Shown here one piece after another: positions 10,247 to 33,125 of a DNA stretch of 64,000 nucleotides; the stretch's first letter is position 1, and each line of letters opens with the position of its first letter. The notes under the pieces were generated by a model that saw only the letters and a program-made list of their open reading frames with translations, had not been told where the DNA came from and did no database searches. Position numbers and translations under genes: made by a program. Location: positions 143,112 through 207,111 of IMG/VR virus record IMGVR_UViG_3300033146_002768. One strand, given 5' to 3'.

Positions 10247-11265
10247 AAATTTTCTTGTCTCCATTCATAAATTTTTGTTAGTGTAATAGGATCAGCATTA
10301 GTAATATCCTTAGAGCTAACATCTTCATAACTATTACAGACTTTACAATGTTCATGATCAGATAAATTTAAATAAGCATTAGAACTATATACTTCATCTA
10401 ATTTCTGAATATTTAAATTTCCTATCTTTGTTTTAAAATATATATCACCAGAGCATCCACACCCTATCATAATACCTGTTGATGAAATAAAATTTTTAGT
10501 AAGAAAGTATTGACACATCTTAGGTCTTTCTTTAACATTAGCAGTTAATTTAAAATTTTCAGACTCTAATACTTCATTACTAATTAATGATCTACGACTA
10601 CAAAAATCATCTCTTGGAAATAACATAGAATTTGTCATTCGACTAATCTGAAATAATAACTTATAAGTTTCAGATGTTATTAGTAATTTATGATGTATTT
10701 TTGTTTTTGTATAAATAGGAATGTTTAAGTTTATATTTATATTATTATCAATTAAATATTTTAAATTATTTTTGAAATTTAAATAAAAGGTTTTTGTACT
10801 TCTGGCAAACCTTTCAAATTCAGAAAAATGTAAACCATAACAACTAATGCCTAACCAACTTATTTTTTTTAATGACAAGAGTTTATCTAAATATTTATTA
10901 TTATCAATTGTTAAATTTGTATAAAAATGATATCCATCAACATTGGGATGATTTTCTAATATATCTAATTTCTCAATAAATGTTTTATCTAAAAAAACTT
11001 CGCCATTCATTGGAGTTAATGAAAAATAAGTAAATCCAAAATCACAACATTGATTCAATATATCTTTAAACATATCAATTGACATACTCATTGACTTCTC
11101 TGTTTTCTTTTCACCTCTTTCTTTTTGATTACAATGGATACAATTTAAATTACATATATTGATAGATTCGATTGCAATATAGTTATAAAACATATTTCCA
11201 TTTTTAGTAAATGATTTATATCTAATATTCTTTTCTATATTAGGAAATTTTGAGAATGTAATCAT
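10243..11265 (-). CDS. Radical SAM protein with Twitch/SPASM-like C-terminus
   Basis: CNLNCIHC, MNGEVFL, C-terminal C...GCGC...IGNL...C..C. Confidence 0.85.
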   Translation of the reverse strand: MITFSKFPNIEKNIRYKSFTKNGNMFYNYIAIESINICNLNCIHCNQKERGEKKTEKSMSMSIDMFKDILNQCCDFGFTYFSLTPMNGEVFLDKTFIEKLDILENHPNVDGYHFYTNLTIDNNKYLDKLLSLKKISWLGISCYGLHFSEFERFARSTKTFYLNFKNNLKYLIDNNININLNIPIYTKTKIHHKLLITSETYKLLFQISRMTNSMLFPRDDFCSRRSLISNEVLESENFKLTANVKERPKMCQYFLTKNFISSTGIMIGCGCSGDIYFKTKIGNLNIQKLDEVYSSNAYLNLSDHEHCKVCNSYEDVSSKDITNADPITLTKIYEWRQENL

Positions 11266-16943: not shown

Positions 16944-18401
16944 TTAATCATGATTAAATACCTTTATATTGTGGTCTATTCCAAATTGGATTGCATCCGA
17001 TGAATTATTTACTAATGGTTGTCCTTTAACATTTAAACTAGTATTTAATAACATTGGGCATCCAGTCTTTTTATAAAATTCATTTATTAAATTCCAATAA
17101 CCAGGACTTTCTTTTTTATTAACTGTATGAACTCTTGATGTATTATCAACATGAACTATAGCAGGAAATTTATCAGGATACTTACATGTCATTACATATT
17201 GCATGTAAGGACTTTTAGAAATAATCATATTAAAATATTCAGCGGCATATTCCTCTAATATAGATGGTGAAAAAGGTCGAAACTTTTGACGATGTTTAAT
17301 GTCGTTAATTTTATCTTTTATATTATTCCCACGAGGATCAGCTAATAAAGATCTATTACCAAATGCTCTTGGTCCAAATTCTGCTCGACCATTTGCAACT
17401 CCAACAATATTACCTTTTAACAATTCTTCTAATAAAGATTTAACTGGATAATCACCTTTAATATTATGACCAAGATAAGGTCCTTTCCAATTTAATCTTC
17501 CATTAATTAATGAAGCGGCTCCTATAGAAGACCCCGAATCACCTGGATTAGGCATTATCCAAATGTCATTAAAATATTTAGGTATTAATCTATTAGCTAA
17601 ACAATTTAAAGCAACTCCGCCACAATAAACTAAATTTTTTGAATTAGATATATGTTTAGATTGTTTAATAATATTTTCAATTACTTCTTCTGTAACTTGT
17701 TGAATTGAAGCTGCTATATCTTTTAGATAAGCTCCTTGTAGATAATCATTTGGAATTCCTTTATGACAATTTATTTTAAGTTTAAAAAATTTATCTTTAA
17801 TAAAATCCTTTTTAATTTTATCAGCATAAGATGGATACCCCCAACCAGCCATTCCCATTAAAATATATTCATCTTCATTTGGTTTTAAACCACATCGTTG
17901 AGAAAATGCTGAATATAATATTCCTAATGAATGAGGATAATTAACTTTTTTCAATAATTTTAAATCATCTTTATTTCCTTCCCATATACTTAAAGTAGAC
18001 CATTCACCAATAGAATCTATACAAACAATAACAGCATTATCAAATGGAGAAGTAAAATAACTTGCAGCAGCATGACATTTATGATGATCCAAATATTTAA
18101 TTGGAGTTTTAGGAAAATCAAATTGTTTAAAATAATTATGAAATATATTTTTAGTTTGAAATACTTCATTATATTGACCAGCAAATAACTGTCTTGTTTT
18201 CTTTAAATATGGTTTTTCATAAAAAGCTATAACATCAGGAGTACCAAATCTTAAAGATTCATTTAATATTTCTTGGTTTAAATATAGATCATTTTTTATA
18301 CCAGAATATCGTTCTGAATGAGCAGCAAATAATATTTCATTGTCGTCTATTAATGCAATTGATGCATCATGACTTAGTGCATTTATTCCTAATACTTTCA
18401 T
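16944..18401 (-). CDS. Carbamoyltransferase, CmcH/NodU/TobZ family (copy 2)
   Basis: HDASIA, HHKCHAA, DSIGE, EYILMGMA, YCGGVALNC, PGDSGSSIGA, EFGPRAFGNRS, RQKFRPF, NTSLN. Confidence 0.93.
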   Translation of the reverse strand: MKVLGINALSHDASIALIDDNEILFAAHSERYSGIKNDLYLNQEILNESLRFGTPDVIAFYEKPYLKKTRQLFAGQYNEVFQTKNIFHNYFKQFDFPKTPIKYLDHHKCHAAASYFTSPFDNAVIVCIDSIGEWSTLSIWEGNKDDLKLLKKVNYPHSLGILYSAFSQRCGLKPNEDEYILMGMAGWGYPSYADKIKKDFIKDKFFKLKINCHKGIPNDYLQGAYLKDIAASIQQVTEEVIENIIKQSKHISNSKNLVYCGGVALNCLANRLIPKYFNDIWIMPNPGDSGSSIGAASLINGRLNWKGPYLGHNIKGDYPVKSLLEELLKGNIVGVANGRAEFGPRAFGNRSLLADPRGNNIKDKINDIKHRQKFRPFSPSILEEYAAEYFNMIISKSPYMQYVMTCKYPDKFPAIVHVDNTSRVHTVNKKESPGYWNLINEFYKKTGCPMLLNTSLNVKGQPLVNNSSDAIQFGIDHNIKVFNHD

Positions 18402-20777: not shown

Positions 20778-21324
20778 ACCATAACCCCGATTTATTTCCT
20801 TGATCTAAAAAAATTTTATTATAATTAATAAATAAACTATTTAATGTTTTAATTATATCTTTTGGATTTTTTAATCCAATCGGTCCACATATTATAGACT
20901 CTTTAGATTTTAATTTTGGTTTACTTAATATCAATAATTTAGATAATCTTTTAAAATCATAAAATGAATCAACCATAATTAAATCTATACTCTTATCACT
21001 AAAATTATTTATTGAGTTTAATACATCATCTTTTATTGTTTTTACATATTTATTAATTTTATATTTTTTGATATTTTTTTTCAAAGTATTTTTCATATTA
21101 TATTCATCTATATCTATACAATAAACTTCTAATTTCTTATAAATAATATATGGAGATATACTACAAATTGATCTACCTTTATAATTGCCACATTCTACTA
21201 ATGTTGAATTATCTGGGATCAAATCTAATAGCGCCCAATATCCTAATACTGATGTATAATCAAACCACCCTTCTGGCAATCCTTCATATAATATTTTTGG
21301 ATATATATTGCGAGCTTGAATCAT
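20752..21324 (-). CDS. Class I SAM-dependent methyltransferase (Methyltransf_24-like)
   Basis: VECGNYKGRS motif I, YCID, DLIMVDS. Confidence 0.7.
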   Translation of the reverse strand: MIQARNIYPKILYEGLPEGWFDYTSVLGYWALLDLIPDNSTLVECGNYKGRSICSISPYIIYKKLEVYCIDIDEYNMKNTLKKNIKKYKINKYVKTIKDDVLNSINNFSDKSIDLIMVDSFYDFKRLSKLLILSKPKLKSKESIICGPIGLKNPKDIIKTLNSLFINYNKIFLDQGNKSGLWYVYKKEYR

Positions 21325-22145
21325 ATAAATTGCCTCACTATTTCATCGTCTTTATTTAAGTATCTATTTTTTAATCCGTTCATATTTAAATCAATATTTC
21401 TATAATAACTTCCATCCTTCCATATCGGTATATTATTATAGATTATATTTTTTTCATAAAAATAAGATTCATGCATTAATCTTGGTCTTGGATCCCACCA
21501 TTTAGCTGCATGGTAATACCAAAAAATATCAAACAATTCAAATAAATTATTTTTATGTTTATGAGTTTTAAATATACATTGTTTTTTAGAAATTCCCCAT
21601 TCTTTTAAAAAACTATAATCATCGCTTTCAGGAGAATGTATAAAAAATTTATCGTCAGATTTTCTTAATGGTTTATATCTATCAAATAAAAATTTCATAT
21701 TATATTGAAAATCTTTATAAACGAATGGCATTTCCCCATAATAATTTACACAACCTTCTGGATATAAATTTTTATTAATTAAATACTTTTTATCCTCAGT
21801 ATGTAAATCTGATAAAATAAAAATTTTTGATTTATTATCTTTGATATTAATAAGACCTTGAACTGCATTTATAGTTCCATAATCTAAAATTAACAATTTA
21901 TTGAATTTAAATTTTAATAGATCTTTTTTCTTTATAGAAATAATGTTAATCTCCCAATCTAAATCATCTAAGTAATATCTTTCTTTAATAATACTAATGA
22001 GTTCTTTTTGAAAAATTGAATTATAATTAATAATTAATAATTTAAAATCTTTATTAAATTCTAAAATACTTAAATAATATTCAACAAGATCTATTACGGC
22101 ACCATGTATATTATTTATATAATTATTAAATAAAATAGCATTCAT
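21321..22145 (-). CDS. Glycosyltransferase-like hypothetical protein
   Basis: N-terminal HGAVIDL, similar to the 18398/19318 pair; C-terminal DPRPRLMHE resembles a GT-B nucleotide-sugar motif. Confidence 0.4.
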   Translation of the reverse strand: MNAILFNNYINNIHGAVIDLVEYYLSILEFNKDFKLLIINYNSIFQKELISIIKERYYLDDLDWEINIISIKKKDLLKFKFNKLLILDYGTINAVQGLINIKDNKSKIFILSDLHTEDKKYLINKNLYPEGCVNYYGEMPFVYKDFQYNMKFLFDRYKPLRKSDDKFFIHSPESDDYSFLKEWGISKKQCIFKTHKHKNNLFELFDIFWYYHAAKWWDPRPRLMHESYFYEKNIIYNNIPIWKDGSYYRNIDLNMNGLKNRYLNKDDEIVRQFI

Positions 22146-22163: not shown

Positions 22164-23063
22164 TCATAATACTTCTCCCTCAATCCAATCTGAGAAATAT
22201 TTATATTTAGTTCTATCTAAAATATGTTCAAAATTATTATCAAATACTTTTAAAAAGAATTTTTTAAAAACCTTACTACTAAAAATTGTATTTATATTAT
22301 CTAATTTATAATCTAATATTAATTTATTGTGATGTCTTGTAACTTCACATATATCATCAATACCATCTTTATGATTTCTGCCAAAAACTTCAGGACAAAT
22401 AATTTGACAATCGGACTGGATAGCTTCTATTAAAGTATGAGGAAATGGGTCTTGGAATTGTTTTGATTTAGGATAAATATAATGAGTTACTTTTTTAAAA
22501 AACTCAATATTATTAAAGGTATGAGTATATTGTTTAATATGCTTATTAGAAATGTTTAAAGAACCGATATTATTTCCCATAGTATAAATATTAACATCTT
22601 GTTTTATATCTTTTAAAATATCAGTTATACATTTAAAACTATCTGGCGTTAACCAGTTTCTTATATAGAATCCAACACAAGGAATGTTAGATGAATTTTT
22701 TTTATTTATTTTAAAATCTGTTATGAAAGGAATGTAATGTTTTATTTTTCTTGCTGACGTATAGTAAAAACCATTATTACATGTATCATATAAAATAGAA
22801 TGATCTCTAGAATACATTAAATAATTTAAGTTTCTTAAACTAATTATATTCAATGGAAATGAATAATTAGAAGCATCTTGTGTATTAAATATAATTCTTT
22901 GATATTGCTCATTCAATTCTCTTAAATGAGCAATATCTCGAATTTGTTTACAATGAATAGTATCTATATAATCACTATGTTCTTCAGCTAATCTTTGAGA
23001 TGCAGTAAATGCTCCTCTTTTTAAATTGTCGTACTTCACGGATATAACTAAATATTTTTTCAT
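22164..23063 (-). CDS. GT4-like glycosyltransferase
   Basis: HYIYPKS..FQDPFPHTLIEAIQSDC resembles the GT4 E/D-x7-E motif. Confidence 0.55.
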   Translation of the reverse strand: MKKYLVISVKYDNLKRGAFTASQRLAEEHSDYIDTIHCKQIRDIAHLRELNEQYQRIIFNTQDASNYSFPLNIISLRNLNYLMYSRDHSILYDTCNNGFYYTSARKIKHYIPFITDFKINKKNSSNIPCVGFYIRNWLTPDSFKCITDILKDIKQDVNIYTMGNNIGSLNISNKHIKQYTHTFNNIEFFKKVTHYIYPKSKQFQDPFPHTLIEAIQSDCQIICPEVFGRNHKDGIDDICEVTRHHNKLILDYKLDNINTIFSSKVFKKFFLKVFDNNFEHILDRTKYKYFSDWIEGEVL

Positions 23064-23087
23064 TTATATTCTGGTGAAACCTTCTTT

Positions 23088-23681
23088 TTAATTAAATGCT
23101 GAATAGAATGTAGCTAACCTTGCTTCAATATCTTCAACAGTTGTTAGTAATATAACTTCATCTGAGAAAATTTTGTAAATATCATAAGTTGATTTTCTCT
23201 CATCTAATTTATCTCTAAGATCTAAATAAATATCTAAAGCATCAATTATTGCTTGATCCCCTGCATTTATTATTTCAAGATATTTAGCTTCTCTATTTTC
23301 ATCAGTAATTACATAACCAAGATCAATCAATCTATTATTTATAATAGTAAATCCATAAAAATCAAACATTGAAAGACTACCAACTCTGTTTGATGTAAAT
23401 TGTCTAGCTTGATTTCTTGCACCAAGAGCTGCTGCAACAATTGCATCTTCTGCTGCCTGAATTATTAGATCACCTTCGACTAATGGATTGATTAAATTTT
23501 TAGCAAAGAATACTGATTGATTAGCTTCTAAAGAAGTTTCAATTGCGTTATAGCATTCAATTGATGAAATTTCATATAGTCTAACTCCGCCAAATTCAAA
23601 GATAGTTTCTTCATCCCCTTGAAATACAGATACTATTTGGTAATTAACACCAACATCATTAATACCAGCTATAAGTTTCAT
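23088..23681 (-). CDS. Hypothetical protein heading the glycan-enzyme block
   Basis: 197 aa ORF with GGAGG RBS and late-promoter-like motif at 23778. Confidence 0.6.
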   Translation of the reverse strand: MKLIAGINDVGVNYQIVSVFQGDEETIFEFGGVRLYEISSIECYNAIETSLEANQSVFFAKNLINPLVEGDLIIQAAEDAIVAAALGARNQARQFTSNRVGSLSMFDFYGFTIINNRLIDLGYVITDENREAKYLEIINAGDQAIIDALDIYLDLRDKLDERKSTYDIYKIFSDEVILLTTVEDIEARLATFYSAFN

Positions 23682-23765
23682 AACTACGCCTCCGTTTATT
23701 ATTTTTAGAATTAATTTGATTATTTAAATGAATTTTTTTACATTAGTTAATAACTAACACTTTCT

Positions 23766-23785
23766 TATTTATAAATATGTTCTAT
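23766..23785 (-). promoter_or_regulatory. Putative late promoter
   Basis: TAGAACATATTTATAAATA upstream of 23681. Confidence 0.6.
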
Positions 23786-23808
23786 ATTTTTTAATAATCT
23801 AACCTTAA

Positions 23809-24921
23809 TTATTTTCTATCAAAAACTCCATTTATTTTTCCCCAAATAGGAGACAAACCTTCATGATATGATTCTTTTGGATTTGACATTCTCCATTTAT
23901 AAAGAGGACCGCTTACACAATGAGTCTCTGTTGAATTATTTAAATATTTTGTATTAACAACCATACTTCCATATTTAATCGCTTCTTCAACAATTGTAGT
24001 TCTCCACATAGGTAATATGGCTGTTACTATATTACCTGTATCAGGATTATCTGTTTTATCAAATCTTAAAATTGATAAACACTGTTGATGAAATCTAGCA
24101 TTATCTAAATAATAACTTTTATCTAAATCTCTTGATTTACAAATAAATTTTATTAATTGAGATAACATTGGAAAATATGTTCCATGCAACTGATCTGAAA
24201 TTCCTCTATACCTAATTTCTTGAGGTTTATATTCTCTACATACTTTATCAAGTTTTAACATTGGCTCTGTAGTATCACAACTTAATAATACTCCATAAGA
24301 ATATTCTTGATTAGGTTTTAAAGTTATAATATTTTCAGTTATATCTCTAATGTATTTAGGATCAGTTTCACTATCTACACTTAACGCCCAATTAACTTGA
24401 TTACTATCTGGAAATTTATTTATATAAGTATGATCTAATAATTTAATACCATTAGTATAAATATGTATTTTATTATTTGTATTTTCACAAATCCAATGAA
24501 CTAATTTATCAAGATCTTTAAACATAGTTGGTTCTCCACCAACCATTCTAATCACTGGATGATATCCATCATAATGATATTCTTTATATGGTCTTGAACC
24601 ATAACCTCTTAGATCATTAGGAACAAATTCTTTTATATTACTTATAAAATCTTCAAGGGTATTGTTACCAGGATGTTTAACAATCAAATCTTTTTCATAA
24701 CAATATTTACAATTTTTATTACAATCATTTGTCATATGAAAAAATGATGTGAAGTAACCTCCTGCTGTTTCTTCGGGATGAAATTGTTTTTCCCAAATAC
24801 TAAAATCTTCTTCTAATAATACTTTATCATCTTCTGATACTAACCATACTCCATTCATATCATAAACAATTTTCTTTTCTATTATATCTCTAAATTTATT
24901 TAAACCATGTATATTAGTCAT
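23809..24921 (-). CDS. Radical SAM protein
   Basis: CNKNCKYC, VGGEPT, YTNG. Confidence 0.88.
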   Translation of the reverse strand: MTNIHGLNKFRDIIEKKIVYDMNGVWLVSEDDKVLLEEDFSIWEKQFHPEETAGGYFTSFFHMTNDCNKNCKYCYEKDLIVKHPGNNTLEDFISNIKEFVPNDLRGYGSRPYKEYHYDGYHPVIRMVGGEPTMFKDLDKLVHWICENTNNKIHIYTNGIKLLDHTYINKFPDSNQVNWALSVDSETDPKYIRDITENIITLKPNQEYSYGVLLSCDTTEPMLKLDKVCREYKPQEIRYRGISDQLHGTYFPMLSQLIKFICKSRDLDKSYYLDNARFHQQCLSILRFDKTDNPDTGNIVTAILPMWRTTIVEEAIKYGSMVVNTKYLNNSTETHCVSGPLYKWRMSNPKESYHEGLSPIWGKINGVFDRK

Positions 24922-25951
24922 TACTAATTTCTCCTGTATGAAAATTCTGATTATAATAATATGTTATTGGACATATATCATAAATACTATTTTTAATATT
25001 ATCTATTAAATATCGTTGAATTAAAAACAACTTAGACTGGTATATATCGTCTATGCTGGTGTATAATTCTGGATCTATATTAAGGTCATCATTAAATTTA
25101 TATGGCGCAAAAAACGGACATTGGACTATTGTATTGTTATAAGTATAGATAGCCTTTAATGGAAATCTATGACAACCATTAACATGATAAGATACATCAA
25201 CATTATCTAATTTTATAATATCTTGAAATTCAGAGTATGTTTTTTGTATTGTATTAAAATTATTACAAGGGTTTTCTAATTCTTCATAATCCTTTAATAA
25301 TTGCAAGACATAAGTTAAATTTAATGGTTTATACTTTTCCATTATATATAATAATTCATCTCTATTTTTTATTACAGTATTAGCTATAACTTTAATTCCT
25401 ATGTCTTGTAATCGTTTTATATTTTTATAATGCTCTTCAAAGAAACCTTTATCAAAATGATAGTAATCTATTGAAGTATAAAAAGTAAATTCCTTACCAA
25501 CAGCATCACATATATCTTTACATAAAATAAAAAACATTAAATTATTTCCAATGTTTTTTAAGTTAGAATTAATTCTAAAACTTAATTTCATTTTATGTCT
25601 TGTATAAATATTTAAACAACGATCTAAAAATTTTAATAAATCATTTGCTGGCAATAAGGTTAACTCACCACAATTGAAATGAAGTTTTAAAGAATCATGA
25701 CCGTCATTTTTAAATTCAATTAAATACTTTTCTAAAAAAATATAAAATTTTTCATAATCAAATTCTTCATCTTGATTTAAATATTCTTTGAAGCAACAAT
25801 GTTCGCAATTCATATTACATTTACTAGTTAAATTCACCCCAAGGTTAGGAGTGAATTTAACTATATTATTTTCTTGTAATATAATTTTATTACACCAACT
25901 TTGAAAATCATTGCTATTCTCTATATGTCTAAACAATTCTTTTATATGCAT
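24914..25951 (-). CDS. Radical SAM protein
   Basis: CNMNCEHCC, NCGELT, INSN, C-terminal CHRF...CPF. Confidence 0.85.
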   Translation of the reverse strand: MHIKELFRHIENSNDFQSWCNKIILQENNIVKFTPNLGVNLTSKCNMNCEHCCFKEYLNQDEEFDYEKFYIFLEKYLIEFKNDGHDSLKLHFNCGELTLLPANDLLKFLDRCLNIYTRHKMKLSFRINSNLKNIGNNLMFFILCKDICDAVGKEFTFYTSIDYYHFDKGFFEEHYKNIKRLQDIGIKVIANTVIKNRDELLYIMEKYKPLNLTYVLQLLKDYEELENPCNNFNTIQKTYSEFQDIIKLDNVDVSYHVNGCHRFPLKAIYTYNNTIVQCPFFAPYKFNDDLNIDPELYTSIDDIYQSKLFLIQRYLIDNIKNSIYDICPITYYYNQNFHTGEISND

Positions 25952-25958
25952 ATGTTTC

Positions 25959-26519
25959 CTATAGATATTCTATATCATATTTTAATCTAATATCACTTTT
26001 AGCTGAATAGTTACAGTTACATGTGCAAGCATAATTACAATTACATGTACAAGCATAATTACATTGACATGTACATGCATAATTACATTGACATGTACAT
26101 GCATAATTACAATTACATGTACAAGAATAATTACAATCACAAACACATATTGCTTCTATAACATTAACTCTATCTCTCATTGCATTATATTGTTGAGCTT
26201 CAATTTCATCATCTGTACCAGTATCAGTATCAGCTAAATATGACGGCCATGTCCATGCAGTAGCAGCATTGATGCCATCACGAAGTCTTCTAACATGTAA
26301 ACTACTAGCATTAGTTGCAGTAGTAACAGCACCTGGATCTGCTGGCCAGCTAGCACTTCTTCTTGTTAATTCTGCAGCAATAGCTGTTCTTAATTCATTA
26401 TGATAAATAGCTTTAATTGAGTTAGTTGTTAATGGATCGTCGCTCCAAGTAGTAGGAGTTATACCTGGTATATACCCTCCATGTGCTGGGCAACTATTTG
26501 TGTGTCCTCCGCAAGCCAT
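25959..26519 (-). CDS. Cys-rich repeat fibre-like protein A (candidate radical SAM substrate)
   Basis: Six C-x-C-x-C-N-Y units, three internal W..D...H/Y..(L/M)R..(I/V) repeats, and terminal SDIRLKYDI. Confidence 0.85.
   Translation of the reverse strand: MACGGHTNSCPAHGGYIPGITPTTWSDDPLTTNSIKAIYHNELRTAIAAELTRRSASWPADPGAVTTATNASSLHVRRLRDGINAATAWTWPSYLADTDTGTDDEIEAQQYNAMRDRVNVIEAICVCDCNYSCTCNCNYACTCQCNYACTCQCNYACTCNCNYACTCNCNYSAKSDIRLKYDIEYL
26007..26147 (-). repeat. 24-bp-period coding tandem repeat encoding (x)CTCxCNY
   Basis: Plus-strand units such as gcataattacaattacatgtacaa repeated without spacers. Confidence 0.95.
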
Positions 26520-26531
26520 AGTATTATCTCC

Positions 26532-27107
26532 TTATTTAGTGCCTGAATAGTTACAATCACATGTACATGAATAATTACAATTACATGTGCAATAGTTACA
26601 ATTACAAGTACAATAGTTACAATTACAAGTACAAGCATAATTACAATCACAAGTACAATTATAATTACATTGACATGTACAAGCATAATTACAATCACAA
26701 ACACATTCAGTTTCCATTGTATTGACTTGCGATCTAATAGCATTATATTGATCTACTTGAATTAGATCTCCAACTTCTGTATCTGGATCGTCTAAATAAG
26801 ATGGCCATGTCCATGCTTTAGCAGCATTTACTCCATTTCTTAATTGTCTTACATGATTACTTTCAATTATATTTGTAGTAGCTACTGTTCCTGGGTCAGT
26901 TGGCCAACTTTGACTACGTCTAATTAATTCATCATCAATAGCATTTCTAAGTTCGTTATGATGTGTTGTTATAAACTTAGTAGATGTGGTTAACGGTTGT
27001 GTAGTCCACACAGTAGGAGATTCTGGGTATATTCCCTGAACATTAGATAGACAAGTGTTACTATGGTCTTCGCATGAAGATGGTGTTGTATGTCCTGTAC
27101 ATGCCAT
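26532..27107 (-). CDS. Cys-rich repeat fibre-like protein B (paralog of A)
   Basis: Seven C-x-C-x-C-N-Y units; shares HNELR.AI..EL.RRS.SWP.DPG and AWTWPSYL.D with A. Confidence 0.85.
   Translation of the reverse strand: MACTGHTTPSSCEDHSNTCLSNVQGIYPESPTVWTTQPLTTSTKFITTHHNELRNAIDDELIRRSQSWPTDPGTVATTNIIESNHVRQLRNGVNAAKAWTWPSYLDDPDTEVGDLIQVDQYNAIRSQVNTMETECVCDCNYACTCQCNYNCTCDCNYACTCNCNYCTCNCNYCTCNCNYSCTCDCNYSGTK
26547..26705 (-). repeat. 21/24-bp-period coding tandem repeat encoding CTCxCNY
   Basis: Seven units, directly readable. Confidence 0.95.
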
Positions 27108-27110
27108 AAT

Positions 27111-28259
27111 TTATCCTCCGTTTTGTTGCAATAATTTTCTTATCGCAAAAACTATTTTTCCATTTATTTTATAAAAATTGCATAATCTTGGTTGTGTAGT
27201 ATAATCTCTCCATTTCTCAAAATAGTCTTTCTTTTCACTTCGGTCAAATTTAACCGGATTACATCTTAAACAAAATGTCGCTAAGCAATTTTTACATTCC
27301 TCAGGTTCCCAACCAAAATTATTATTATGTAACTTATTAGTTATATCTAAATTTGTTATAAAGGATTCATTTTTAATATCAATAATTAAATGTTCACCTT
27401 TTTTATCATCGTACATACTTCCATGACATTTGAAAATATTACCATCCCAATTAACACAAACCATATCTCGACCTGCGCAACATAAAGCTTTATTAGGATT
27501 AAACCAACTAAAGAAGAATTTATTATTTGTTTTGAAAAATTCTATTTCTTCCTTAGCAATTTTAATTAAAGACTCATTCAGTTCTTTATTGAATACTTCT
27601 ATTTCTTTATTATTATATTTTTCTAAGTTATAATAATCTATTGTTGGAAAATAATTATCACTTCTAAAGAAATTATTTTCAGGCATTTCTTTATAAAGAT
27701 TTAATACATCTTCTCTTGCTTCAGGAAGATATTTAAATGCTTCAGGTGATATAGTAGATTTTATAACTGATGGTATTTTTCTTTTCCATAAGTCTTTAAT
27801 AACATTTCTTATTTTAGTACCAGTTAATTTATTCTTTTTAGTTTTTCTAAAGATATCATGAACTGGCATACCATCATATGATACTTGAACACAAAACTTT
27901 GGATGACCAAACAAAGATTTATTTTTAGATTCTTCAAATATATCCATATAACGATCTAATAAATATCCATTGCTATAAATAAAAAACTTTACTCTATCAT
28001 CTGTTTTAAAAGCAGTGTATATTTTTCTAATTGCTTTTTCATTAAGAGTAGGTTCCCCACCCCAAAATCCAATATTAAGTAAATCATAATTCTTTTTAAA
28101 GAAATCAGAATTTAAAAGTTGATTCATTTTTATAATAAACAATTCATGATCTTTAAATTCTTTATGTTCAAAAAATTCATGTTCAAAACAATAGGTACAA
28201 TTGAAATTACAATTTGCTGTAACCGTTAAGTCGATATTATATATTCTTATATTTTGCAT
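27111..28259 (-). CDS. Radical SAM/SPASM peptide-maturase-like protein
   Basis: CNFNCTYC, GGEPTL, SPASM-like CCAG...V...DGNIFKCHG...CKNC.ATFCLRC. Confidence 0.9.
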   Translation of the reverse strand: MQNIRIYNIDLTVTANCNFNCTYCFEHEFFEHKEFKDHELFIIKMNQLLNSDFFKKNYDLLNIGFWGGEPTLNEKAIRKIYTAFKTDDRVKFFIYSNGYLLDRYMDIFEESKNKSLFGHPKFCVQVSYDGMPVHDIFRKTKKNKLTGTKIRNVIKDLWKRKIPSVIKSTISPEAFKYLPEAREDVLNLYKEMPENNFFRSDNYFPTIDYYNLEKYNNKEIEVFNKELNESLIKIAKEEIEFFKTNNKFFFSWFNPNKALCCAGRDMVCVNWDGNIFKCHGSMYDDKKGEHLIIDIKNESFITNLDITNKLHNNNFGWEPEECKNCLATFCLRCNPVKFDRSEKKDYFEKWRDYTTQPRLCNFYKINGKIVFAIRKLLQQNGG

Positions 28260-28269
28260 TATTCACCTT

Positions 28270-29265
28270 TTAGAATTGTCTAAATTCATGCTTTGTTTCT
28301 TTTTCATCATATGTAATTCCTGTTGTAGGAGATAAATATGAATTACCTATAAAATTATCTTTTTCACATATTCTGCATATATCACATACATGTCCACAAA
28401 TAGGAATTTTATATCTTTCAAAAATAGATTTTAAATATGGAAGATTTTTTTCTTTAATTGTTTTGCCTACATGTGATTGTTTTAAAGTATCATCAAGTTC
28501 TTGATAAGCATATCCAATAGTAATCCTACTTAAATAATCACTATTAAATTTTTCTAATATATAAATAGTATCGTCAATTACTTTATCATAATTACCAGAA
28601 TGAACTGTATAACTAATTTTAAAAGGAATTTTATATTTAGATAATGTTTTAATAGATTCTTCAACTATATCTTTACTATTAGTTCCATCTGGAAATTTTC
28701 TTTTGAATTGTCCAGAACCATCATAACTTATTTCCAAATTAAAACTTATATTATAGTGTTTACCATATTCTATTAAACTTTTTAAAGCATTTAATTTGAT
28801 AGAATTAAATAAGGTAGCATTAGTTATTAAACTTAATCCAAATCCTTTTGCTTTACCTTGAGAAACTAATTCTATTGTTTTAGCTATTGTATATTGTATT
28901 AAATCAAATTTTAAAAAGGGTTCTCCGCCCATAATAACAATAGTTGATATACAGTCTTTTTCTCTTACGCAAATTTCATTTAAAAAATCATCAATCATTT
29001 TAGGAGTACAATTAGCTTGATCTTCAAGACCATTCTTACTACTAGATTCATAGCAATATGTACATCTTAAATTACAATCAGTATTTAAATAAATAACATT
29101 AGTTCTTTGACTATTATTCATTTTAATTTTATTTGTTGGCAGATTGATACAAGTGTCAAATTCACAAGAGTTACATTCACCATTACATTTTTGAGATTCA
29201 TTCTTTGATAATATATCACTCATATCATTAAAGAATGAATCTATATGTTTATCTATTTGATACAT
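28270..29265 (-). CDS. Radical SAM protein with Cys-rich N-terminal extension
   Basis: CNLRCTYC, MGGEPFL, ITNA; N-terminal CNGECNSCEFDTC; C-terminal C...CD.C..C. Confidence 0.88.
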   Translation of the reverse strand: MYQIDKHIDSFFNDMSDILSKNESQKCNGECNSCEFDTCINLPTNKIKMNNSQRTNVIYLNTDCNLRCTYCYESSSKNGLEDQANCTPKMIDDFLNEICVREKDCISTIVIMGGEPFLKFDLIQYTIAKTIELVSQGKAKGFGLSLITNATLFNSIKLNALKSLIEYGKHYNISFNLEISYDGSGQFKRKFPDGTNSKDIVEESIKTLSKYKIPFKISYTVHSGNYDKVIDDTIYILEKFNSDYLSRITIGYAYQELDDTLKQSHVGKTIKEKNLPYLKSIFERYKIPICGHVCDICRICEKDNFIGNSYLSPTTGITYDEKETKHEFRQF

Positions 29266-29693
29266 TAGTTTCCAATACTTTGTCTAATTTTATCTACTAA
29301 AGATGTAATTTCATCATCAATGTTTTCTTGTACTATTGGCGGTGTAGTTCCATCTGGAATATTTGAATGTCCATGACAATTAAATGCCGGGTCTTCATTG
29401 TTTTCTATATTAGTAACTGGACGTTTAAATAATTCTGAGGCTTCTTGAACAGGGTGATTAGAAACTGGGTGTTTAAATAGTTCTGAGGATTCTTGAATAG
29501 GTTGACTAAAAATTTCTGGTTCATTACATTTACAATTGTCATCTTCTAATAATTTCAATACTTTATCACTTAATTGCAAAGCTTCAAAACTAACTTCATC
29601 ATTAATTTCTTTCATTGCATGTGTGATTTTTAAAAGACCTTTAGCACAATTAAAAATAATTTCATTTTGTTCTGGTGTATTATTACAACTCAT
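29265..29693 (-). CDS. Hypothetical protein with short internal duplication
   Basis: PIQESSELFKHPVSN / PVQEASELFKRPVTN. Confidence 0.6.
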   Translation of the reverse strand: MSCNNTPEQNEIIFNCAKGLLKITHAMKEINDEVSFEALQLSDKVLKLLEDDNCKCNEPEIFSQPIQESSELFKHPVSNHPVQEASELFKRPVTNIENNEDPAFNCHGHSNIPDGTTPPIVQENIDDEITSLVDKIRQSIGN

Positions 29694-29708: not shown

Positions 29709-30824
29709 TTAACCTACATTTTTTATTGAATTAATTAATGTTTCTTTAAACATTTTATTTTCTTTTAGTTCTTTGGTAATTCTCATTGTATTTTTATAAG
29801 TAATTTTTAATATCTTACATAAATTATCAATCGGTTCTGCATACTCTTCTGGTGATGATGAATTTTTTAATTGACTATTCATACACCCACCATTACAGTA
29901 TTTATATAATTCACATTCTAAACATTTTTTAAATGTCTTAGGATTTATTAGATTTGGATTTCTAAGTAATTGAATTTCTTTAGTAAATTCTTGATTAAAT
30001 GAATTTCCTATTTTCTTTTCTTTACAGCTACCAAATCTTGCACATGGATATATATCTCCATTAGGCATAAACCCAGCTCCACCAGTTCCAGCAAAACAAC
30101 CAAAAGGTCTTTTACCAAAACTCTTACCAAATAAAAGGTCTAAAGTATATAGTTGAAAGAATCCAACATTAGCATTAATGCCTTCGTTATAATATTTGAT
30201 TACTTGGTTAGCTAATAAATGACATTCAATTTCATAATTAGCAACATCATAATCTGTCCATATATCATCTCGAACTAATGTAAAATCAGGGTTGTTGACA
30301 TTTAATTCTTCAACAAACCATTTAAAATTATCAACCATTGTAGGAACACAATCAGGTGATACCATTACTTTACACCCACCACCACGTCCAAAGAAATATG
30401 ATTTTAATGGTTCAGTTAAATATAAATCTAAACTAGAACCACCATGTTTCAATTTACGATTTTTTTCATTCCACAATCCATCAAATGATAAAGACAATGC
30501 AATCTGATTATCATCAATGTATTGTCTTTTATAATCATCTTGTAATACTAAACCATTTGTCATTGCTATAATAAATTTACAATGAGAATCATTTTTTAAA
30601 ATTGGAATTATATATTCAATAAGCTCCCAATTTAATAATGGTTCACCACCAAACAATGCAGCAGTATATTCATGTTGTCCATAAAAGTCCATTATCTTTG
30701 GGAGCATCTTAAAATGTTTATCAAATATTTCGTTTGTCATATTATTCGGTTGTTGATTAATATAACAATATTCACAAGCTAAATTACAATCTTCAGTCGT
30801 TACTATCTGAAATTCAAATCCCAT
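29709..30824 (-). CDS. Radical SAM/SPASM (anSME-like) maturase
   Basis: CNLACEYC, FGGEPLLN, SFDG, full SPASM-like CFAG...G.IYPC...CLECELYKYCNGGC...C. Confidence 0.92.
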   Translation of the reverse strand: MGFEFQIVTTEDCNLACEYCYINQQPNNMTNEIFDKHFKMLPKIMDFYGQHEYTAALFGGEPLLNWELIEYIIPILKNDSHCKFIIAMTNGLVLQDDYKRQYIDDNQIALSLSFDGLWNEKNRKLKHGGSSLDLYLTEPLKSYFFGRGGGCKVMVSPDCVPTMVDNFKWFVEELNVNNPDFTLVRDDIWTDYDVANYEIECHLLANQVIKYYNEGINANVGFFQLYTLDLLFGKSFGKRPFGCFAGTGGAGFMPNGDIYPCARFGSCKEKKIGNSFNQEFTKEIQLLRNPNLINPKTFKKCLECELYKYCNGGCMNSQLKNSSSPEEYAEPIDNLCKILKITYKNTMRITKELKENKMFKETLINSIKNVG

Positions 30825-30834
30825 TATATTTCCT

Positions 30835-31359
30835 TTATTTCACGAATCCTAATACTAATTTTTCATCTGGATTATCATTAGTTTCTAATGCAATAGCCAC
30901 TTTAAATATATGTTCTAATACATTAGTTGCTGATCTTAAACAACCATTACCTGCAGAAATAAGAATATCTTTTTTATAAACTGGTCCGATTGTTCTAACT
31001 GGAACTCTACCAACTAAACCAACAACTGCTCCATCTTCCATTTTTGTATTCATTTCGAAACCAGGTGCTTTAGAAATAATACCAACTACAAATTCAGATG
31101 CATCTTTATCACAAATCTCTGCATCAAATTCACTATCAGATATTTCCATTACTGTCCCAATAGGAAGAGAAATATCTGGATTAACAGAATATCTCTCAGC
31201 AAGGTCACCGTAATATGCTCCAGTTGTATCACCTTGAAATGTAGCACAAAAAATATTATTAAATCTATCAGTTAGACCGCTACCTATATTGTATGCTCCA
31301 TTGCCAACATCAGTAGTAGTTTCATCTTTACCAATTTTTTGTCTTATTTTATAATTCAT
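30835..31359 (-). CDS. Stand-alone tail-spike chaperone-like domain (Peptidase G2/IMC-like)
   Basis: GDLAERY...GTV.....VGIIS..P...VGLVGRVPV...G.V.K.D.L. Confidence 0.6.
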   Translation of the reverse strand: MNYKIRQKIGKDETTTDVGNGAYNIGSGLTDRFNNIFCATFQGDTTGAYYGDLAERYSVNPDISLPIGTVMEISDSEFDAEICDKDASEFVVGIISKAPGFEMNTKMEDGAVVGLVGRVPVRTIGPVYKKDILISAGNGCLRSATNVLEHIFKVAIALETNDNPDEKLVLGFVK

Positions 31360-31370
31360 AATATATCTCC

Positions 31371-32195
31371 TTATACCTCAATCCAAACGTTACCAGCAGA
31401 ATAAGGTGCTAAAGAAACAACGTCAAATTGATTAGCTAAAGTAACAGTTGTATTTCCTTCAATAGTATCACTACCTTGTCTTTGAACAGTTACAGTGTTG
31501 GCATCAGAAGAAAGTTTCATTATTCTAATAACTCTATCTGATGTAGATGCTAAAGGTAATTCAACTATAGTGTTTCCAGCAGCAGTACTTACAACTACAG
31601 TATCATCTTCTGATGTAGCGGTATATGTTCCACCGCCAGTAACCTCAGAATAAACTACAGATGTTCCTGCTCCACCACCACCAGCTGTTGATGTTCCAAT
31701 GCTTGGATTTTCTGGATCATAATTAAATACTGCATCAACTTGTTCAACTCCACCTGGAGCACTTACTTCTATAGCACCAAGGAAAAGGTGTGTACCTGGA
31801 TTATAAACAGATGCTCTTTGTGAAGGTTTAATAATCTTAACAGATGCTTCTGGTGGAGGAGATATCTTTGCATATTCATAATGAAGGACTAGATAATAAT
31901 ATCCAACCTCATTCCAAACACCACCTGCTCCATCTACATAAAAATCGACATCTGTCATATCAACATTAATGTTTTCAATTTCAATTAATACATCATCCAT
32001 TATTGCTTTGCCAGCATTTGCTCTTGAAGTAGTATTGTTAACTATTTCTACAGTTATAGGAGATGGCATTAATAATACATTTGCACCATCTGATATAATT
32101 CTAGTAAGTTTATTTACTACATCTGAGTTGTAGCTTGAATAAGGATCAACACTTCTGACTTGTGTAGGAATTGGGTTCCCCATAATTTCCTCCAA
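31371..32195 (-). CDS. Tail/baseplate-associated structural protein
   Basis: C-terminal T4 fibre-type beta module (VVSTAAGN.I.LP....R.I.I.K....N.VTV...G.DTIEG). Confidence 0.55.
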   Translation of the reverse strand: MEEIMGNPIPTQVRSVDPYSSYNSDVVNKLTRIISDGANVLLMPSPITVEIVNNTTSRANAGKAIMDDVLIEIENINVDMTDVDFYVDGAGGVWNEVGYYYLVLHYEYAKISPPPEASVKIIKPSQRASVYNPGTHLFLGAIEVSAPGGVEQVDAVFNYDPENPSIGTSTAGGGGAGTSVVYSEVTGGGTYTATSEDDTVVVSTAAGNTIVELPLASTSDRVIRIMKLSSDANTVTVQRQGSDTIEGNTTVTLANQFDVVSLAPYSAGNVWIEV

Positions 32196-32501: not shown

Positions 32502-33125
32502 TTAGTCACTTATTATATCAGTGTCCTCAAATACATCTTGAACAGTAGGATAGTGTTTATCTACTGTTACAATTATCCAGCCATCATCTTTTAATTTTTG
32601 ATTTTTATGTGGATCAGGAAATGGATCTTCATTATGCCAAAAAGAATTAGGAAAGTCAAATGCTACTTTCTTAATAGGGTCAGCCATATCAGTAATATAT
32701 TTCCATAATAATGCATCATCATGAAAATGTCTTTTCTCTATACTATAATTATTTTCTAAGTAAGGATAAGCATCATGAAGGAATGTTAGAATATCAGCTT
32801 TATTTTTTGATACTCCTTCTAAGTTTATATGTGAAAACTTATCATTCAATAAAGGATTATCAATATCTATTTCTTCATCTAATGGTTCAGATGGTATTCC
32901 TTCTGTATCTTGAAATAGAATACTATCTTTGAATTTATATCTTGTCGCTTGATATTGTGTGCTAGATATAGGACAATCTGGATACTTTAATTTATACTCA
33001 GCGAAGGTCATTCCATCATGTTTCTTTTTTAAATGTTTAGGTGTTATAAGTCTGAATGCTTCGCCACACTCTTGGCATATAACTTTACCATTTATACCTT
33101 TAGGATATTGCAACTCAATAGTCAT
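32502..33125 (-). CDS. Zn-finger plus degenerate DUF559/Vsr-like endonuclease
   Basis: CQEC...HLKKKH finger; YITDMADPIKKVAFDFPNSFWH where active enzymes have D....IE.DG..WH. Confidence 0.6.
   Translation of the reverse strand: MTIELQYPKGINGKVICQECGEAFRLITPKHLKKKHDGMTFAEYKLKYPDCPISSTQYQATRYKFKDSILFQDTEGIPSEPLDEEIDIDNPLLNDKFSHINLEGVSKNKADILTFLHDAYPYLENNYSIEKRHFHDDALLWKYITDMADPIKKVAFDFPNSFWHNEDPFPDPHKNQKLKDDGWIIVTVDKHYPTVQDVFEDTDIISD

What the first reader, a model, noticed from the sequence alone, without database searches (positions are those of the whole stretch)
25959..25997. Cys-repeat protein A ends in an isolated Peptidase S74 auto-cleavage motif (SDIRLKYDI)
Seen: ...CNYSAKSDIRLKYDIEYL-stop. 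Established: SDxRLKxxI begins the intramolecular chaperone domain of tail spikes and fibres, with Ser/Lys auto-cleavage. Here only about 12 residues remain and paralog B lacks the motif. Inference: this ties the Cys-repeat proteins to fibre ancestry. The motif may be a minimal processing tag (a follower peptide), or the chaperone may be supplied in trans, for example by the free-standing IMC-like gene at 30835.
Basis: partly seen in the sequence, partly recalled or inferred. Interest (0 to 1): 0.68.

Follow-up and report, generated by a model that had tools for sequence, protein, structure and literature searches.

The report
Orphan head of split fibre chaperone
The last 12 residues of this jumbo-phage cysteine-repeat protein are the cleavage-site "head" of a tail-fibre chaperone domain that this protein family has split into two genes, but the gene for the other half is missing from its usual place in this phage.

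Summary
Protein A (25959..26519, minus strand) ends ...CNYSAK-SDIRLKYDIEYL-stop, and paralog B lacks this tail. The motif occurs once in all six frames of the 207-kb phage record; about 0.03 are expected by chance.

It is not an isolated curiosity. Of 150 distant homologs, 60 carry the same tail (52 exactly 12 residues; consensus S-D-x-R-L-K-x-[NED]-I-x-Y-[LFMI]). Another 17 carry a full Peptidase_S74 domain starting at the same Ser. A few carry a Hint domain there instead.

In 31 of 39 informative tail-bearing loci, the next gene encodes an 85-103 aa "headless" S74 protein that starts at domain position 13. So the domain is split: the head (scissile Ser, catalytic Lys) sits on the substrate, and the core is made separately. 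At least 1,217 such headless proteins exist in metagenomes.

In this window the core gene is absent. Two radical SAM genes fill its slot, and nothing like it is found in the 207 kb, which is about 66% of the genome. The free-standing gene at 30835 belongs to another chaperone type and is an unlikely partner.

The proteins sit in a conserved cluster with three radical SAM/SPASM maturases.

Verdict: first reading partly supported; a new variant of a known kind.

The parts
25962..25997 (-). 12-residue S74 head (stub) SDIRLKYDIEYL: Ser175 is the putative scissile/nucleophile residue and Lys180 the putative general base. The stop codon follows at 25959-25961.
   Evidence: It matches the family stub consensus at every conserved position. 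It corresponds to PF13884 profile positions 1-12.
25959..26519 (-). Cys-repeat protein A (186 aa): a confidently modelled helical N-terminal domain (about residues 12-128), six C-x-C-x-C-N-Y repeats, an SAK linker, then the stub.
   Evidence: the blocks covering residues 21-90 and 111-120 have pLDDT >=96; most of the repeat region is <50.
26007..26141 (.). 24-bp tandem repeat (5.6 copies) encoding the Cys repeats of A.
26532..27107 (-). Cys-repeat paralog B (191 aa), 54% identical to A. It ends ...CNYSGTK with no stub.
27111..28259 (-). Radical SAM peptide-maturase-like gene, conserved directly upstream of the Cys-repeat genes in relatives.
28270..29265 (-). Radical SAM gene of the conserved module.
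29265..29693 (-). Small conserved protein of the module (142 aa), function unknown.
29709..30824 (-). Radical SAM/SPASM gene. Its best NCBIfam match is the PapB ranthipeptide maturase (139.9 bits, below the 340-bit cut-off).
23809..25951 (-). Two further radical SAM-like genes (24914-25951 and 23809-24921). They occupy the slot where relatives carry the headless S74 core gene.
23682..23808 (-). AT-rich intergenic stretch before the conserved downstream gene. No remnant of a headless S74 gene was detected.
23088..23681 (-). Conserved downstream gene (197 aa) that follows the Cys-repeat or S74-core genes in nearly all loci. It has a weak structural likeness to tail-fibre assembly chaperones (a lead only).
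30835..31359 (-). Free-standing Peptidase_G2-like fibre C-terminal domain (P0003). It is not an S74 relative and is an unlikely partner of the stub.

Best explanation
The 12 residues are the detached head of a split Peptidase_S74 intramolecular-chaperone domain.

Shown: the head holds the Ser and Lys that form the catalytic dyad in solved S74 domains. The same 12-residue tail is conserved across the family. In most relatives the rest of the domain, from position 13 to the C-terminal coiled coil, is a separate 85-103 aa protein encoded by the next gene.

Inferred mechanism: the headless core trimerises and grips the three heads of a nascent Cys-repeat trimer. In unsplit S74 domains the cleavage-site 'cable' already threads the beta 'donut' of a neighbouring subunit. 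The core helps the repeat region fold as a trimeric beta-helix-like fibre. The Ser/Lys dyad then cuts just before Ser175 (K174|S175), which frees a 12-mer and a re-usable chaperone. One core gene can thereby serve several tandem paralogs.

In this phage the core gene is not in its conserved slot, nor anywhere in the 207 kb assembled. The head here is an orphan. It is either served by a core gene in the unassembled third of the genome or has outlived its partner.

The substrate proteins are very probably also modified by the three adjacent radical SAM/SPASM enzymes, and they are likely virion fibre components.
For: - Motif and position. Chance is excluded.
- Family survey: 227 homologs among 1.84e9 representatives. 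Of the best 150, 60 have the stub (52 exactly 12 aa), 17 a full S74, and 37 end at the repeat.
- Full-length forms hit PF13884 from profile position 1 at the equivalent Ser.
- Headless S74 ORFs with their own RBS and ATG lie right after stub genes. All 7 tested hit PF13884 (for the member shown, from profile position 16), and they match solved S74 chaperones 8jov, 3gud and 7dc3.
- De-duplicated count: 31 loci with an adjacent core, 2 with a distant one and 6 with none, out of 39 informative stub loci. Seven arrays have two or more stub paralogs; in those inspected, a single core gene follows the last copy.
- 1,217 headless proteins were found, and 120 of the 120 listed lack the SDxxLK head.
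- Structural rationale: in T5 pb1 the cut is before the Ser, Lys activates it, and the next 12 residues form a loop winding round the trimer (PMC4690869). In MyRF the cable of one subunit passes through the donut of its neighbour and cleavage needs the trimer (PMC8326128).
- Complex prediction for a relative's tail plus core gave weak support: score 0.44 against a best control of 0.00. That mark was reached by 58 of 80 solved complexes and 2 of 110 mismatched pairs, but scores of 0.60 or under are weak. Partner pLDDT was 80 and the runs agreed in at least 63% of contacts.
- Synteny with the closest relatives is identical except for the missing core gene.
- A distant repeat-sharing protein of Campylobacter phage IBB_35 (gene 3-9) was detected in virions.
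Against: - No S74 core was found in any frame of the 207-kb record (best E=1.9 with a 37-sequence HMM), and its usual slot holds two radical SAM genes.
- No cleavage has been measured for any family member.
- The complex prediction is only weak support.
- Protein A has a 3-residue SAK linker before the Ser, whereas 48 of 60 stubs have none.
- The upstream Arg/Asp 'sensor' residues described for endoNF and T5 have no obvious counterpart in the Cys repeats.
- The repeat region is not confidently modelled, so the beta-helix fold is inferred only.
Confidence: 0.62

Rival explanations
1. Orphan relic. The headless S74 gene was lost when the two radical SAM genes came to occupy its slot. The 12 residues are no longer cut and persist as a neutral or merely structural C-terminal tail.
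For: No core gene is present in 207 kb, and the conserved slot is occupied by other genes. MyRF data indicate that cleavage needs the trimeric core, and donut mutations reduce it. Many family members, including paralog B, work without any tail.
Against: The stub matches the consensus at every conserved position (S, D, R, L, K, D, I, Y, L), although A is only 64% identical to its closest relative. Five other diverse loci without an adjacent core also keep an intact stub (L004, L046, L058, L081, L105). About a third of the genome is unassembled.
Confidence: 0.22
2. Autonomous minimal self-cleaving tag. Once the Cys-repeat trimer is folded, for example with help from the radical SAM cross-links or the downstream Tfa-like protein, the Ser/Lys dyad in the stub cuts without any S74 core.
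For: Both dyad residues lie inside the stub, and in phage S74 domains the other residues named for catalysis come from the mature part upstream. Six loci keep intact stubs with no adjacent core.
Against: In solved structures the cleavage-site segment is held by the core of a neighbouring subunit, and cleavage depends on core trimerisation. Of the 39 informative stub loci, 33 do keep a core gene, which argues the core is needed.
Confidence: 0.08
3. One reading: the free-standing IMC-like protein at 30835 supplies the chaperone or cutter for the stub.
For: It is a free-standing chaperone-like fibre C-terminus in the same gene cluster. No other candidate was found in the record.
Against: It resembles Peptidase_G2-type fibre ends, not S74 (Pfam E=0.1; PHROG tail-fibre C-terminus). 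It is homologous to the C-terminus of 225-1535 aa proteins in relatives. Those relatives also carry dedicated headless S74 genes, so it is not the usual partner.
Confidence: 0.04
4. The tail is a follower or recognition peptide for the neighbouring radical SAM maturases rather than a protease or chaperone element.
For: The genes are tightly linked to radical SAM/SPASM maturases.
Against: Paralog B and many homologs without any tail lie in the same conserved radical SAM clusters. The tail is homologous to the S74 start and co-occurs with the S74 core gene, not with particular radical SAM genes.
Confidence: 0.04

Closest known systems
Peptidase_S74 C-terminal intramolecular chaperone domain (PF13884) of the phage K1F endosialidase, T5 pb1 L-shaped fibre and GA-1 neck appendage, and the MYRF ICA domain
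   Same: It has the same start motif with the Ser-x4-Lys dyad, in the same position directly after a repetitive fibre-like region. Family members with the complete domain exist. The headless cores of relatives match solved S74 chaperones.
   Different: Only the first 12 of roughly 70-130 residues are present in protein A. In the family the domain is divided between two genes at position 12/13, whereas all described S74 domains are single-chain and act in cis. Here even the second gene is missing.
Trans-acting tail-fibre assembly chaperones (T4 gp38/gp57A, Mu/P2 Tfa; Caudo_TAP)
   Same: A small separately encoded protein, placed just downstream of a fibre gene, is presumed to assist trimer folding. 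The conserved gene at 23088-23681 has a weak structural likeness to this class.
   Different: The headless S74 proteins are unrelated in sequence to Tfa proteins. They would complete a proteolytic site on the substrate, and Tfa proteins do not cut their clients.
Split inteins and Hint-type autoprocessing domains
   Same: An autoprocessing domain is naturally divided into a short piece fused to the substrate and a separately made remainder. Some family members carry a Hint-like domain at exactly this position (P0114 Hint_2, 27.2 bits; L056, L074-L077).
   Different: The fold and the chemistry differ: a Ser/Lys hydrolytic cut rather than Cys-mediated acyl shifts. No splicing is implied.
Radical SAM/SPASM-modified Cys-rich substrates (ranthipeptides such as PapA/PapB, SCIFF, and the protein-sized CrpA/CrpC of Methanococcus)
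   Same: A Cys-rich repeat region is encoded next to SPASM-type radical SAM enzymes whose best family match is PapB. Protein-sized substrates of this kind are precedented (PMC13692751).
   Different: None of the enzymes reaches an equivalog cut-off. The system is phage-encoded, with three to five maturases per substrate, and the substrate carries a fibre-chaperone element. No cross-link has been shown.
Campylobacter group II phages (CP220, CPt10, CP21, IBB_35), protein CPT_0180 / gene 3-9, phrog_26958
   Same: These are low-GC myoviruses distantly related to T4, with 11-12 radical SAM genes and one intragenic 21-bp (7-residue) Cys repeat. The IBB_35 protein was found in virions.
   Different: Similarity to protein A is limited to the repeats. 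The Campylobacter-phage protein is 534 aa, has about 200 different residues after the repeats, and has no S74 head.

Membership tests
Peptidase_S74 intramolecular chaperone domain (PF13884) | N-terminal motif S-D-x-R-L-K-x-x-I carrying the Ser/Lys dyad | tested here: met
   SDIRLKYDIEYL at residues 175-186. It matches the stub consensus derived from 60 homologs.
Peptidase_S74 intramolecular chaperone domain (PF13884) | Profile match at or above Pfam's gathering score | tested here: not met
   Pfam scan of protein A found 0 families at E<=1. The PF13884 search of the whole record found 0 matches at E<=1.
Peptidase_S74 intramolecular chaperone domain (PF13884) | Complete fold in one chain: beta core ('donut' or tentacles) plus C-terminal trimeric coiled coil | tested here: not met
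   Only 12 residues follow the Ser, and then comes the stop codon.
Peptidase_S74 intramolecular chaperone domain (PF13884) | Homology by descent: the same position in homologs is occupied by a full S74 domain | tested here: met
   17 of 150 representatives carry a full domain. P0141 scores 62 bits, P0107 25.7 and P0087 23.8, all from profile position 1 at the aligned Ser.
Peptidase_S74 intramolecular chaperone domain (PF13884) | Autoproteolytic release just before the Ser after trimer folding | not testable with these tools
   This needs intact-mass MS of wild type against S175A/K180A.
Split S74 system (head on the substrate plus a separately encoded headless core), defined in this work | A headless S74 gene adjacent to, or elsewhere in the genome of, the stub-bearing gene | tested here: not met
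   Present in 33 of 39 informative relatives (31 adjacent). In this record no hit was found in any frame (best E=1.9). The record is about 66% complete.
Split S74 system (head on the substrate plus a separately encoded headless core), defined in this work | A stub of 12 residues matching S-D-x-R-L-K-x-[NED]-I-x-Y-[LFMI] at the very C-terminus | tested here: met
Radical SAM/SPASM peptide-maturase substrates (ranthipeptide-like) | A Cys-rich repeat core encoded next to radical SAM/SPASM maturases, with the linkage conserved in relatives | tested here: met
   Five radical SAM genes flank A and B. Homologs of the three upstream ones lie next to the Cys-repeat gene in most of 29 viral loci and in the closest metagenomic relatives.
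Radical SAM/SPASM peptide-maturase substrates (ranthipeptide-like) | The maturase reaches the curated cut-off of a characterised family (for example PapB, NF047865) | tested here: not met
   The best score is 139.9 bits against a cut-off of 340.
Radical SAM/SPASM peptide-maturase substrates (ranthipeptide-like) | Thioether or other cross-links present in the product | not testable with these tools
   This needs anaerobic co-expression and MS.
Peptidase_G2 IMC domain (PF11962), for the gene at 30835 | Profile match at or above the gathering score | tested here: not met
   12.4 bits against a cut-off of 25, E=0.1. PHROG tail-fibre C-terminus, E=3e-7.

The most novel reading that the evidence does not exclude
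The Cys-repeat proteins are virion fibre or needle proteins. Their trimeric beta-helix would be stapled by many thioether cross-links installed by three or more dedicated phage radical SAM/SPASM enzymes. It would be folded and trimmed by a naturally split, recyclable S74 chaperone-protease, with the 12-residue head on each substrate and one headless core gene serving several paralogs. That would be a RiPP-style cross-linked structural protein of a virus, and the first two-gene version of an 'intramolecular' chaperone.
Probability: 0.3. Interest if true: 0.85.

Novelty: new variant of a known kind. Interest (0 to 1): 0.7.

Why it matters
S74 domains are the textbook case of a chaperone that works only as part of its own client and is then discarded. 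A natural two-gene version would show that the client needs only the 12-residue cleavage-site segment in cis. Such a version is seen here in dozens of phage loci and in more than a thousand headless proteins. It would give a minimal tag-plus-helper system for folding and trimming trimeric fibres, and it would explain many small 'hypothetical' PF13884 proteins in metagenomes.

The result also links the long-noted surplus of radical SAM genes in some large myoviruses related to T4 (11-12 in Campylobacter phages CP220 and CPt10; 12 in a marine T4-like viral genome) to a concrete candidate substrate, the Cys-repeat proteins. Earlier work read those genes as host metabolism.

Tried and rejected
- tblastn of protein A against 50,697 phage records: no match. 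The only cultured kin were reached through the repeat-only relative of phrog_26958.
- Pfam and NCBIfam on A and B: nothing.
- Search for the missing S74 core in the record: PF13884, an HMM of S74 tails without their first 12 residues, an HMM of 5 cores, an HMM of 37 cores on all frames of at least 20 aa, and the genome search with alignment A2. All were negative for G000. They were also negative for G001 (the L001 record) and G002 (the L004 record).
- Fold of the N-terminal domain: Foldseek against PDB (best E=0.1), BFVD (best E=0.04) and VIA-align wide (best Z=6.4, within the noise for helical bundles). No fold assignment was made.
- phmmer of the P0141 tail against PDB sequences: no hit.
- Tree of the N-terminal domains, to ask whether the stub arose once. 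The tail states are interleaved (at least 7 stub changes forced by well-supported branches), but most forks are unresolved, so no direction of change is claimed.
- Literature: no paper in the held library describes a split S74 domain or links phage radical SAM genes to Cys-repeat proteins. The library is open-access only, so this is not proof of absence.
- The look-up of sequencing runs for 23000-27200: none was listed. The A/radical-SAM junction could therefore not be checked on reads, and read laying was not used.
- The pair protein A plus the 30835 product was not sent to complex prediction. The single job went to the likelier pair in a relative.
- Chance occurrence and a follower peptide for the radical SAM enzymes were both considered and rejected.

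Full report
**1. Observation**

Window 25959..26519 (minus strand) encodes a 186-aa protein, A. It ends ...CTCNCNYSAK-SDIRLKYDIEYL-stop. Ser175 is at 25995-25997, Lys180 at 25980-25982, and the TAG stop at 25959-25961. The next gene starts 7 nt later.

Paralog B (26532..27107, minus strand, 191 aa) is 54% identical to A and ends ...CDCNYSGTK with no such tail. Both proteins have a roughly 125-aa N-terminal domain followed by six or seven C-x-C-x-C-N-Y repeats. The repeats are encoded by 24- and 21-bp tandem DNA repeats.

SD.RLK..I occurs once in all six frames of the whole record, against about 0.03 expected. The fuller family consensus occurs once against 0.001 expected.

**2. Setting**

The window is the last 64 kb of a 207,111-bp IMG/VR virus record that CheckV rates as 66% complete. 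GC content is 21-34%. The window carries a major head protein, a portal protein, a DnaB-like helicase and an NAD-dependent ligase, so this is a large tailed phage.

A and B lie inside a minus-strand block, from about 8.5 to 31 kb, that contains at least 12 radical SAM genes and two carbamoyltransferases. Five of the radical SAM genes flank A and B directly. The one at 29709-30824 has a SPASM domain, and its best NCBIfam match is the PapB ranthipeptide maturase. That match scores 139.9 bits, well below the 340-bit cut-off, so it is a likeness and not membership.

**3. The family**

An exhaustive phmmer search of 1.84 billion representatives found 227 homologs of A, 91 of them at E<=1e-10. I sorted the best 150 by what follows the last repeat:

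- 60 carry the same short tail, 52 of them exactly 12 residues long.
- 17 carry a tail of about 70-90 residues.
- 37 end within six residues of the last repeat.
- 30 end some other way.
- In 6 the repeat pattern used for sorting found no repeat.

The stub consensus is S-D-[EK]-R-L-K-x-[NED]-I-x-Y-[LFMI]-COOH. S, D and K were part of the search pattern. R (41/60), L (52/60), I (55/60) and Y (53/60) were not. Protein A matches every conserved position. Its only oddity is a 3-residue SAK linker before the Ser, where 48 of 60 stubs have none.

The long tails are genuine Peptidase_S74 domains. They begin at profile position 1 on the aligned Ser: P0141 scores 62 bits, P0107 25.7 and P0087 23.8, against a cut-off of 22 (alignment). 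A few homologs carry a Hint-like autoprocessing domain at the same place instead (P0114 Hint_2, 27.2 bits; L056, L057, L074-L077).

Homologs with a full S74 domain exist, and the 12-residue form is conserved rather than decaying.

**4. The domain is split**

An HMM built from the long tails without their first 12 residues hit a small ORF immediately after the stub-bearing gene in L002, L013, L016 and L017. In L003 it hit one 5 kb downstream. These ORFs have their own ribosome-binding site and ATG, and three of the four adjacent ones are in a different frame from the upstream gene.

The encoded proteins are 89-103 aa. They begin at S74 position 13 (...LGLDFIKKLKPxxFkYk...H.GFiAQD...ELIAPLVKAVQEL, then a coiled coil). 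All seven that I aligned hit PF13884; for the member whose table is shown, the match starts at profile position 16. Their profile also matches the solved S74 chaperones 8jov, 3gud and 7dc3.

The two closest stub-bearing homologs I looked up, P0007 (62% identical to A) and P0018, each have a 94- or 99-aa PF13884 gene directly downstream.

Over all viral and metagenomic loci, de-duplicated, there are 42 stub loci and 39 are informative. Of those, 31 have the headless core within -60 to +150 nt. Two have it elsewhere in the locus. Six have none: L004, L046, L058, L081, L105 and this window.

Seven arrays have two or more stub-bearing paralogs. In the arrays inspected, a single core gene follows the last copy.

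Free-standing cores next to tail-less Cys-repeat genes were seen only in special cases. L055 has its stub in a shifted frame. L082 has an in-frame stop just before the stub. L042 and L043 have the core fused to a third, short paralog.

A profile search of 5.8 billion proteins found 1,217 small headless S74 proteins. All 120 listed lack the SDxxLK head.

**5. Why the split makes structural sense** (from the literature; not tested here)

In T5 pb1 the cut is at Thr1263|Ser1264, and the Ser leaves with the chaperone. Lys1269 activates the Ser. Residues 1265-1276 form a loop that winds round the trimer before the chaperone core begins (PMC4690869). That segment is exactly what the stub corresponds to.

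In the MyRF ICA structure, the 'cable' carrying the cleavage site of one subunit threads the beta 'donut' of the neighbouring subunit. S587 and K592 are essential, and cleavage needs the trimer (PMC8326128). So head-to-core contact is already between chains in unsplit domains, and cutting the gene after position 12 preserves it.

A complex prediction for a relative (the L016 tail plus its core) gave weak support. The score was 0.44 against a best control of 0.00. That mark was reached by 58 of 80 solved complexes and 2 of 110 mismatched pairs, but passes at 0.60 or under are weak. Partner pLDDT was 80, and the runs agreed in at least 63% of contacts.

The inferred mechanism is this. The trimeric core grips three heads, helps the 7-8-residue Cys repeats fold as a trimeric beta-helix-like fibre, and cuts before the Ser. 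It is then released with only a 12-mer lost, and so can be re-used.

**6. This phage is the exception**

The closest relatives (L032, L036, L038, L039, L083, L063) share one gene order. It runs: radical SAM/SPASM gene, a small gene (in most of them), two radical SAM genes, the Cys-repeat gene or genes, the headless S74 gene, the homolog of 23088-23681, then the homolog of 22164-23063 or 21321-22145.

The window has the same order, except that two further radical SAM genes (24914-25951 and 23809-24921) sit where the core gene should be. The 127-nt spacer before 23088-23681 has no coding remnant.

No S74 core is detectable in any frame of the 207 kb; the best E-value with a 37-sequence HMM is 1.9. 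The stub is nevertheless intact. It is 10/12 identical to that of L032 (SDIRLKYDIEMI), although the two proteins are only 64% identical overall.

Three readings remain:
- The core is encoded in the unassembled third of the genome. L003 and L061 show that it can move.
- The stub is a relic.
- The stub works without a core.

Five other loci with intact stubs and no adjacent core argue against simple decay. The structural data argue against core-free cleavage. I could not check the junction on reads, because no run was listed.

**7.

The gene at 30835 encodes a 174-aa protein whose only Pfam signal is Peptidase_G2 at E=0.1. It matches tail-fibre C-termini in PHROGs. It aligns to residues 379-525 of a 558-aa protein in L002 and to the ends of proteins of up to 1,535 aa elsewhere.

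Its homologs coexist with dedicated headless S74 genes. It therefore belongs to a different chaperone type and is not the family's usual partner for the stub. The pair itself was not tested.

**8. What the proteins are**

AlphaFold2 models the N-terminal domain (about residues 12-128) with high confidence, as a domain with three long helices. The 10-residue blocks covering residues 21-90 and 111-120 have mean pLDDT of 96 or more. No convincing structural relative was found. The repeat region is not modelled as a monomer.

Four things point to a fibre-like virion component:
- the S74 and Hint autoprocessing ends;
- the conserved position just after a fibre-like gene;
- the weak tail-assembly-chaperone likeness of the downstream gene (TM 0.43-0.59, a lead only);
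- the detection of a repeat-sharing 534-aa protein (gene 3-9) in Campylobacter phage IBB_35 virions.

That last link rests on the repeats alone. The constant company of three radical SAM/SPASM maturases makes enzymatic cross-linking of the Cys repeats likely. A protein-sized precedent exists in CrpA/CrpC (PMC13692751). Nothing here shows the chemistry.

**9. Novelty**

Large numbers of radical SAM genes in phages related to T4 have been reported and were read as host metabolism. CP220 and CPt10 have 11 and 12, plus one intragenic 21-bp repeat (PMC2853527). A marine T4-like viral genome has 12 (PMC5332604).

I found no description of a split S74 domain, nor of the Cys-repeat/radical SAM link, in the held library. 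I class the finding as a new variant of a known kind. For this window specifically, it is an orphan head of that variant.

Noticed in passing
window 8583-30824, minus strand: There are at least 12 radical SAM genes (8583, 9410, 10243 with SPASM, 12806, 13674, 14665, 15388, 23809, 24914, 27111, 28270, 29709 with SPASM). Two carbamoyltransferase genes (11265-12809 and 16944-18401) lie in the same block. Many of these have homologs in the relatives' loci.
   Followed up: partly
window 30835-31359 and 31371-32195, minus strand; L002 5776-7452: The G2-like fibre C-terminal domain is a separate 174-aa gene here and in L001. In other relatives it is the end of a 225-1535 aa protein. This may be a second chaperone-type domain that has become free-standing. 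The 274-aa upstream ORF shows no similarity to the N-terminal part of the L002 protein.
   Followed up: partly
P0051, P0114; L056, L057, L074-L077: Some family members have a Hint/intein-like domain (CFLAGTPV..., Hint_2 27.2 bits) directly after the Cys repeats, in place of the S74 head. This suggests that freeing the C-terminus of the repeat region is the common requirement.
   Followed up: partly
L038 7477-7989, L042 7432-7941, L045 1142-1600: A third, short paralog (about 153-170 aa) carries a few Cys repeats fused to an S74 core. In the L038 and L042 copies the head has Asn in place of the scissile Ser (..NNDSMLKDN.., ..NNDQNVKE..), so the core there looks permanently attached. In L042 the two preceding paralogs end exactly at ...CNCNY.
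   Followed up: no
L082 205-330; L055 419-560: L082 has an in-frame stop between ...CNCNYTT and SDERLKTDIVYM. L055 has the stub in a shifted reading frame. These could be read-through, frameshifting or sequencing errors at the repeat/stub junction.
   Followed up: no
L001 (end of a 202,719-bp contig) and L003 (start of a 79,155-bp contig), same sample 3300035390: Both contigs break inside a Cys-repeat gene array and are probably two pieces of one genome of about 280 kb. The repeats break assemblies. In L003 a 5-kb island of genes (predicted KDO-8-P synthase-like, CMP-KDO synthetase-like, transaldolase-like and a radical SAM gene, judged by eye from the translations) separates the array from the headless S74 gene.
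   Followed up: partly
window 23088-23681, minus strand: This 197-aa gene follows the Cys-repeat or S74-core genes in nearly every locus. The Atlas structure search gives weak likeness to tail assembly chaperone families (Phage_tail_APC, Caudo_TAP, DUF4376; TM 0.43-0.59).
   Followed up: partly
protein A residues 1-16 (window about 26472-26519) and the homologs in alignment A3: The conserved N-terminal motif M-A-C-x-x-H-x-x-x-C-x-x-x-x-G has Cys/His spacing that suggests a metal site or a further modification site.
   Followed up: no
Campylobacter phages CP220, CPt10, CP21 and IBB_35 (L026-L028, L111 4001-5605): The only cultured phages reached are Campylobacter group II myoviruses. Their 534-aa repeat protein is annotated as hypothetical, and in CP21 as 'putative N-acetylneuraminate pyruvate lyase'. 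In IBB_35 it was detected in virions.
   Followed up: yes
window 32502-33125, minus strand: A ROS/MucR-type regulator domain (PF05443, 29.9 bits) is encoded at the head of the minus-strand block, at the point where the strand switches.
   Followed up: no
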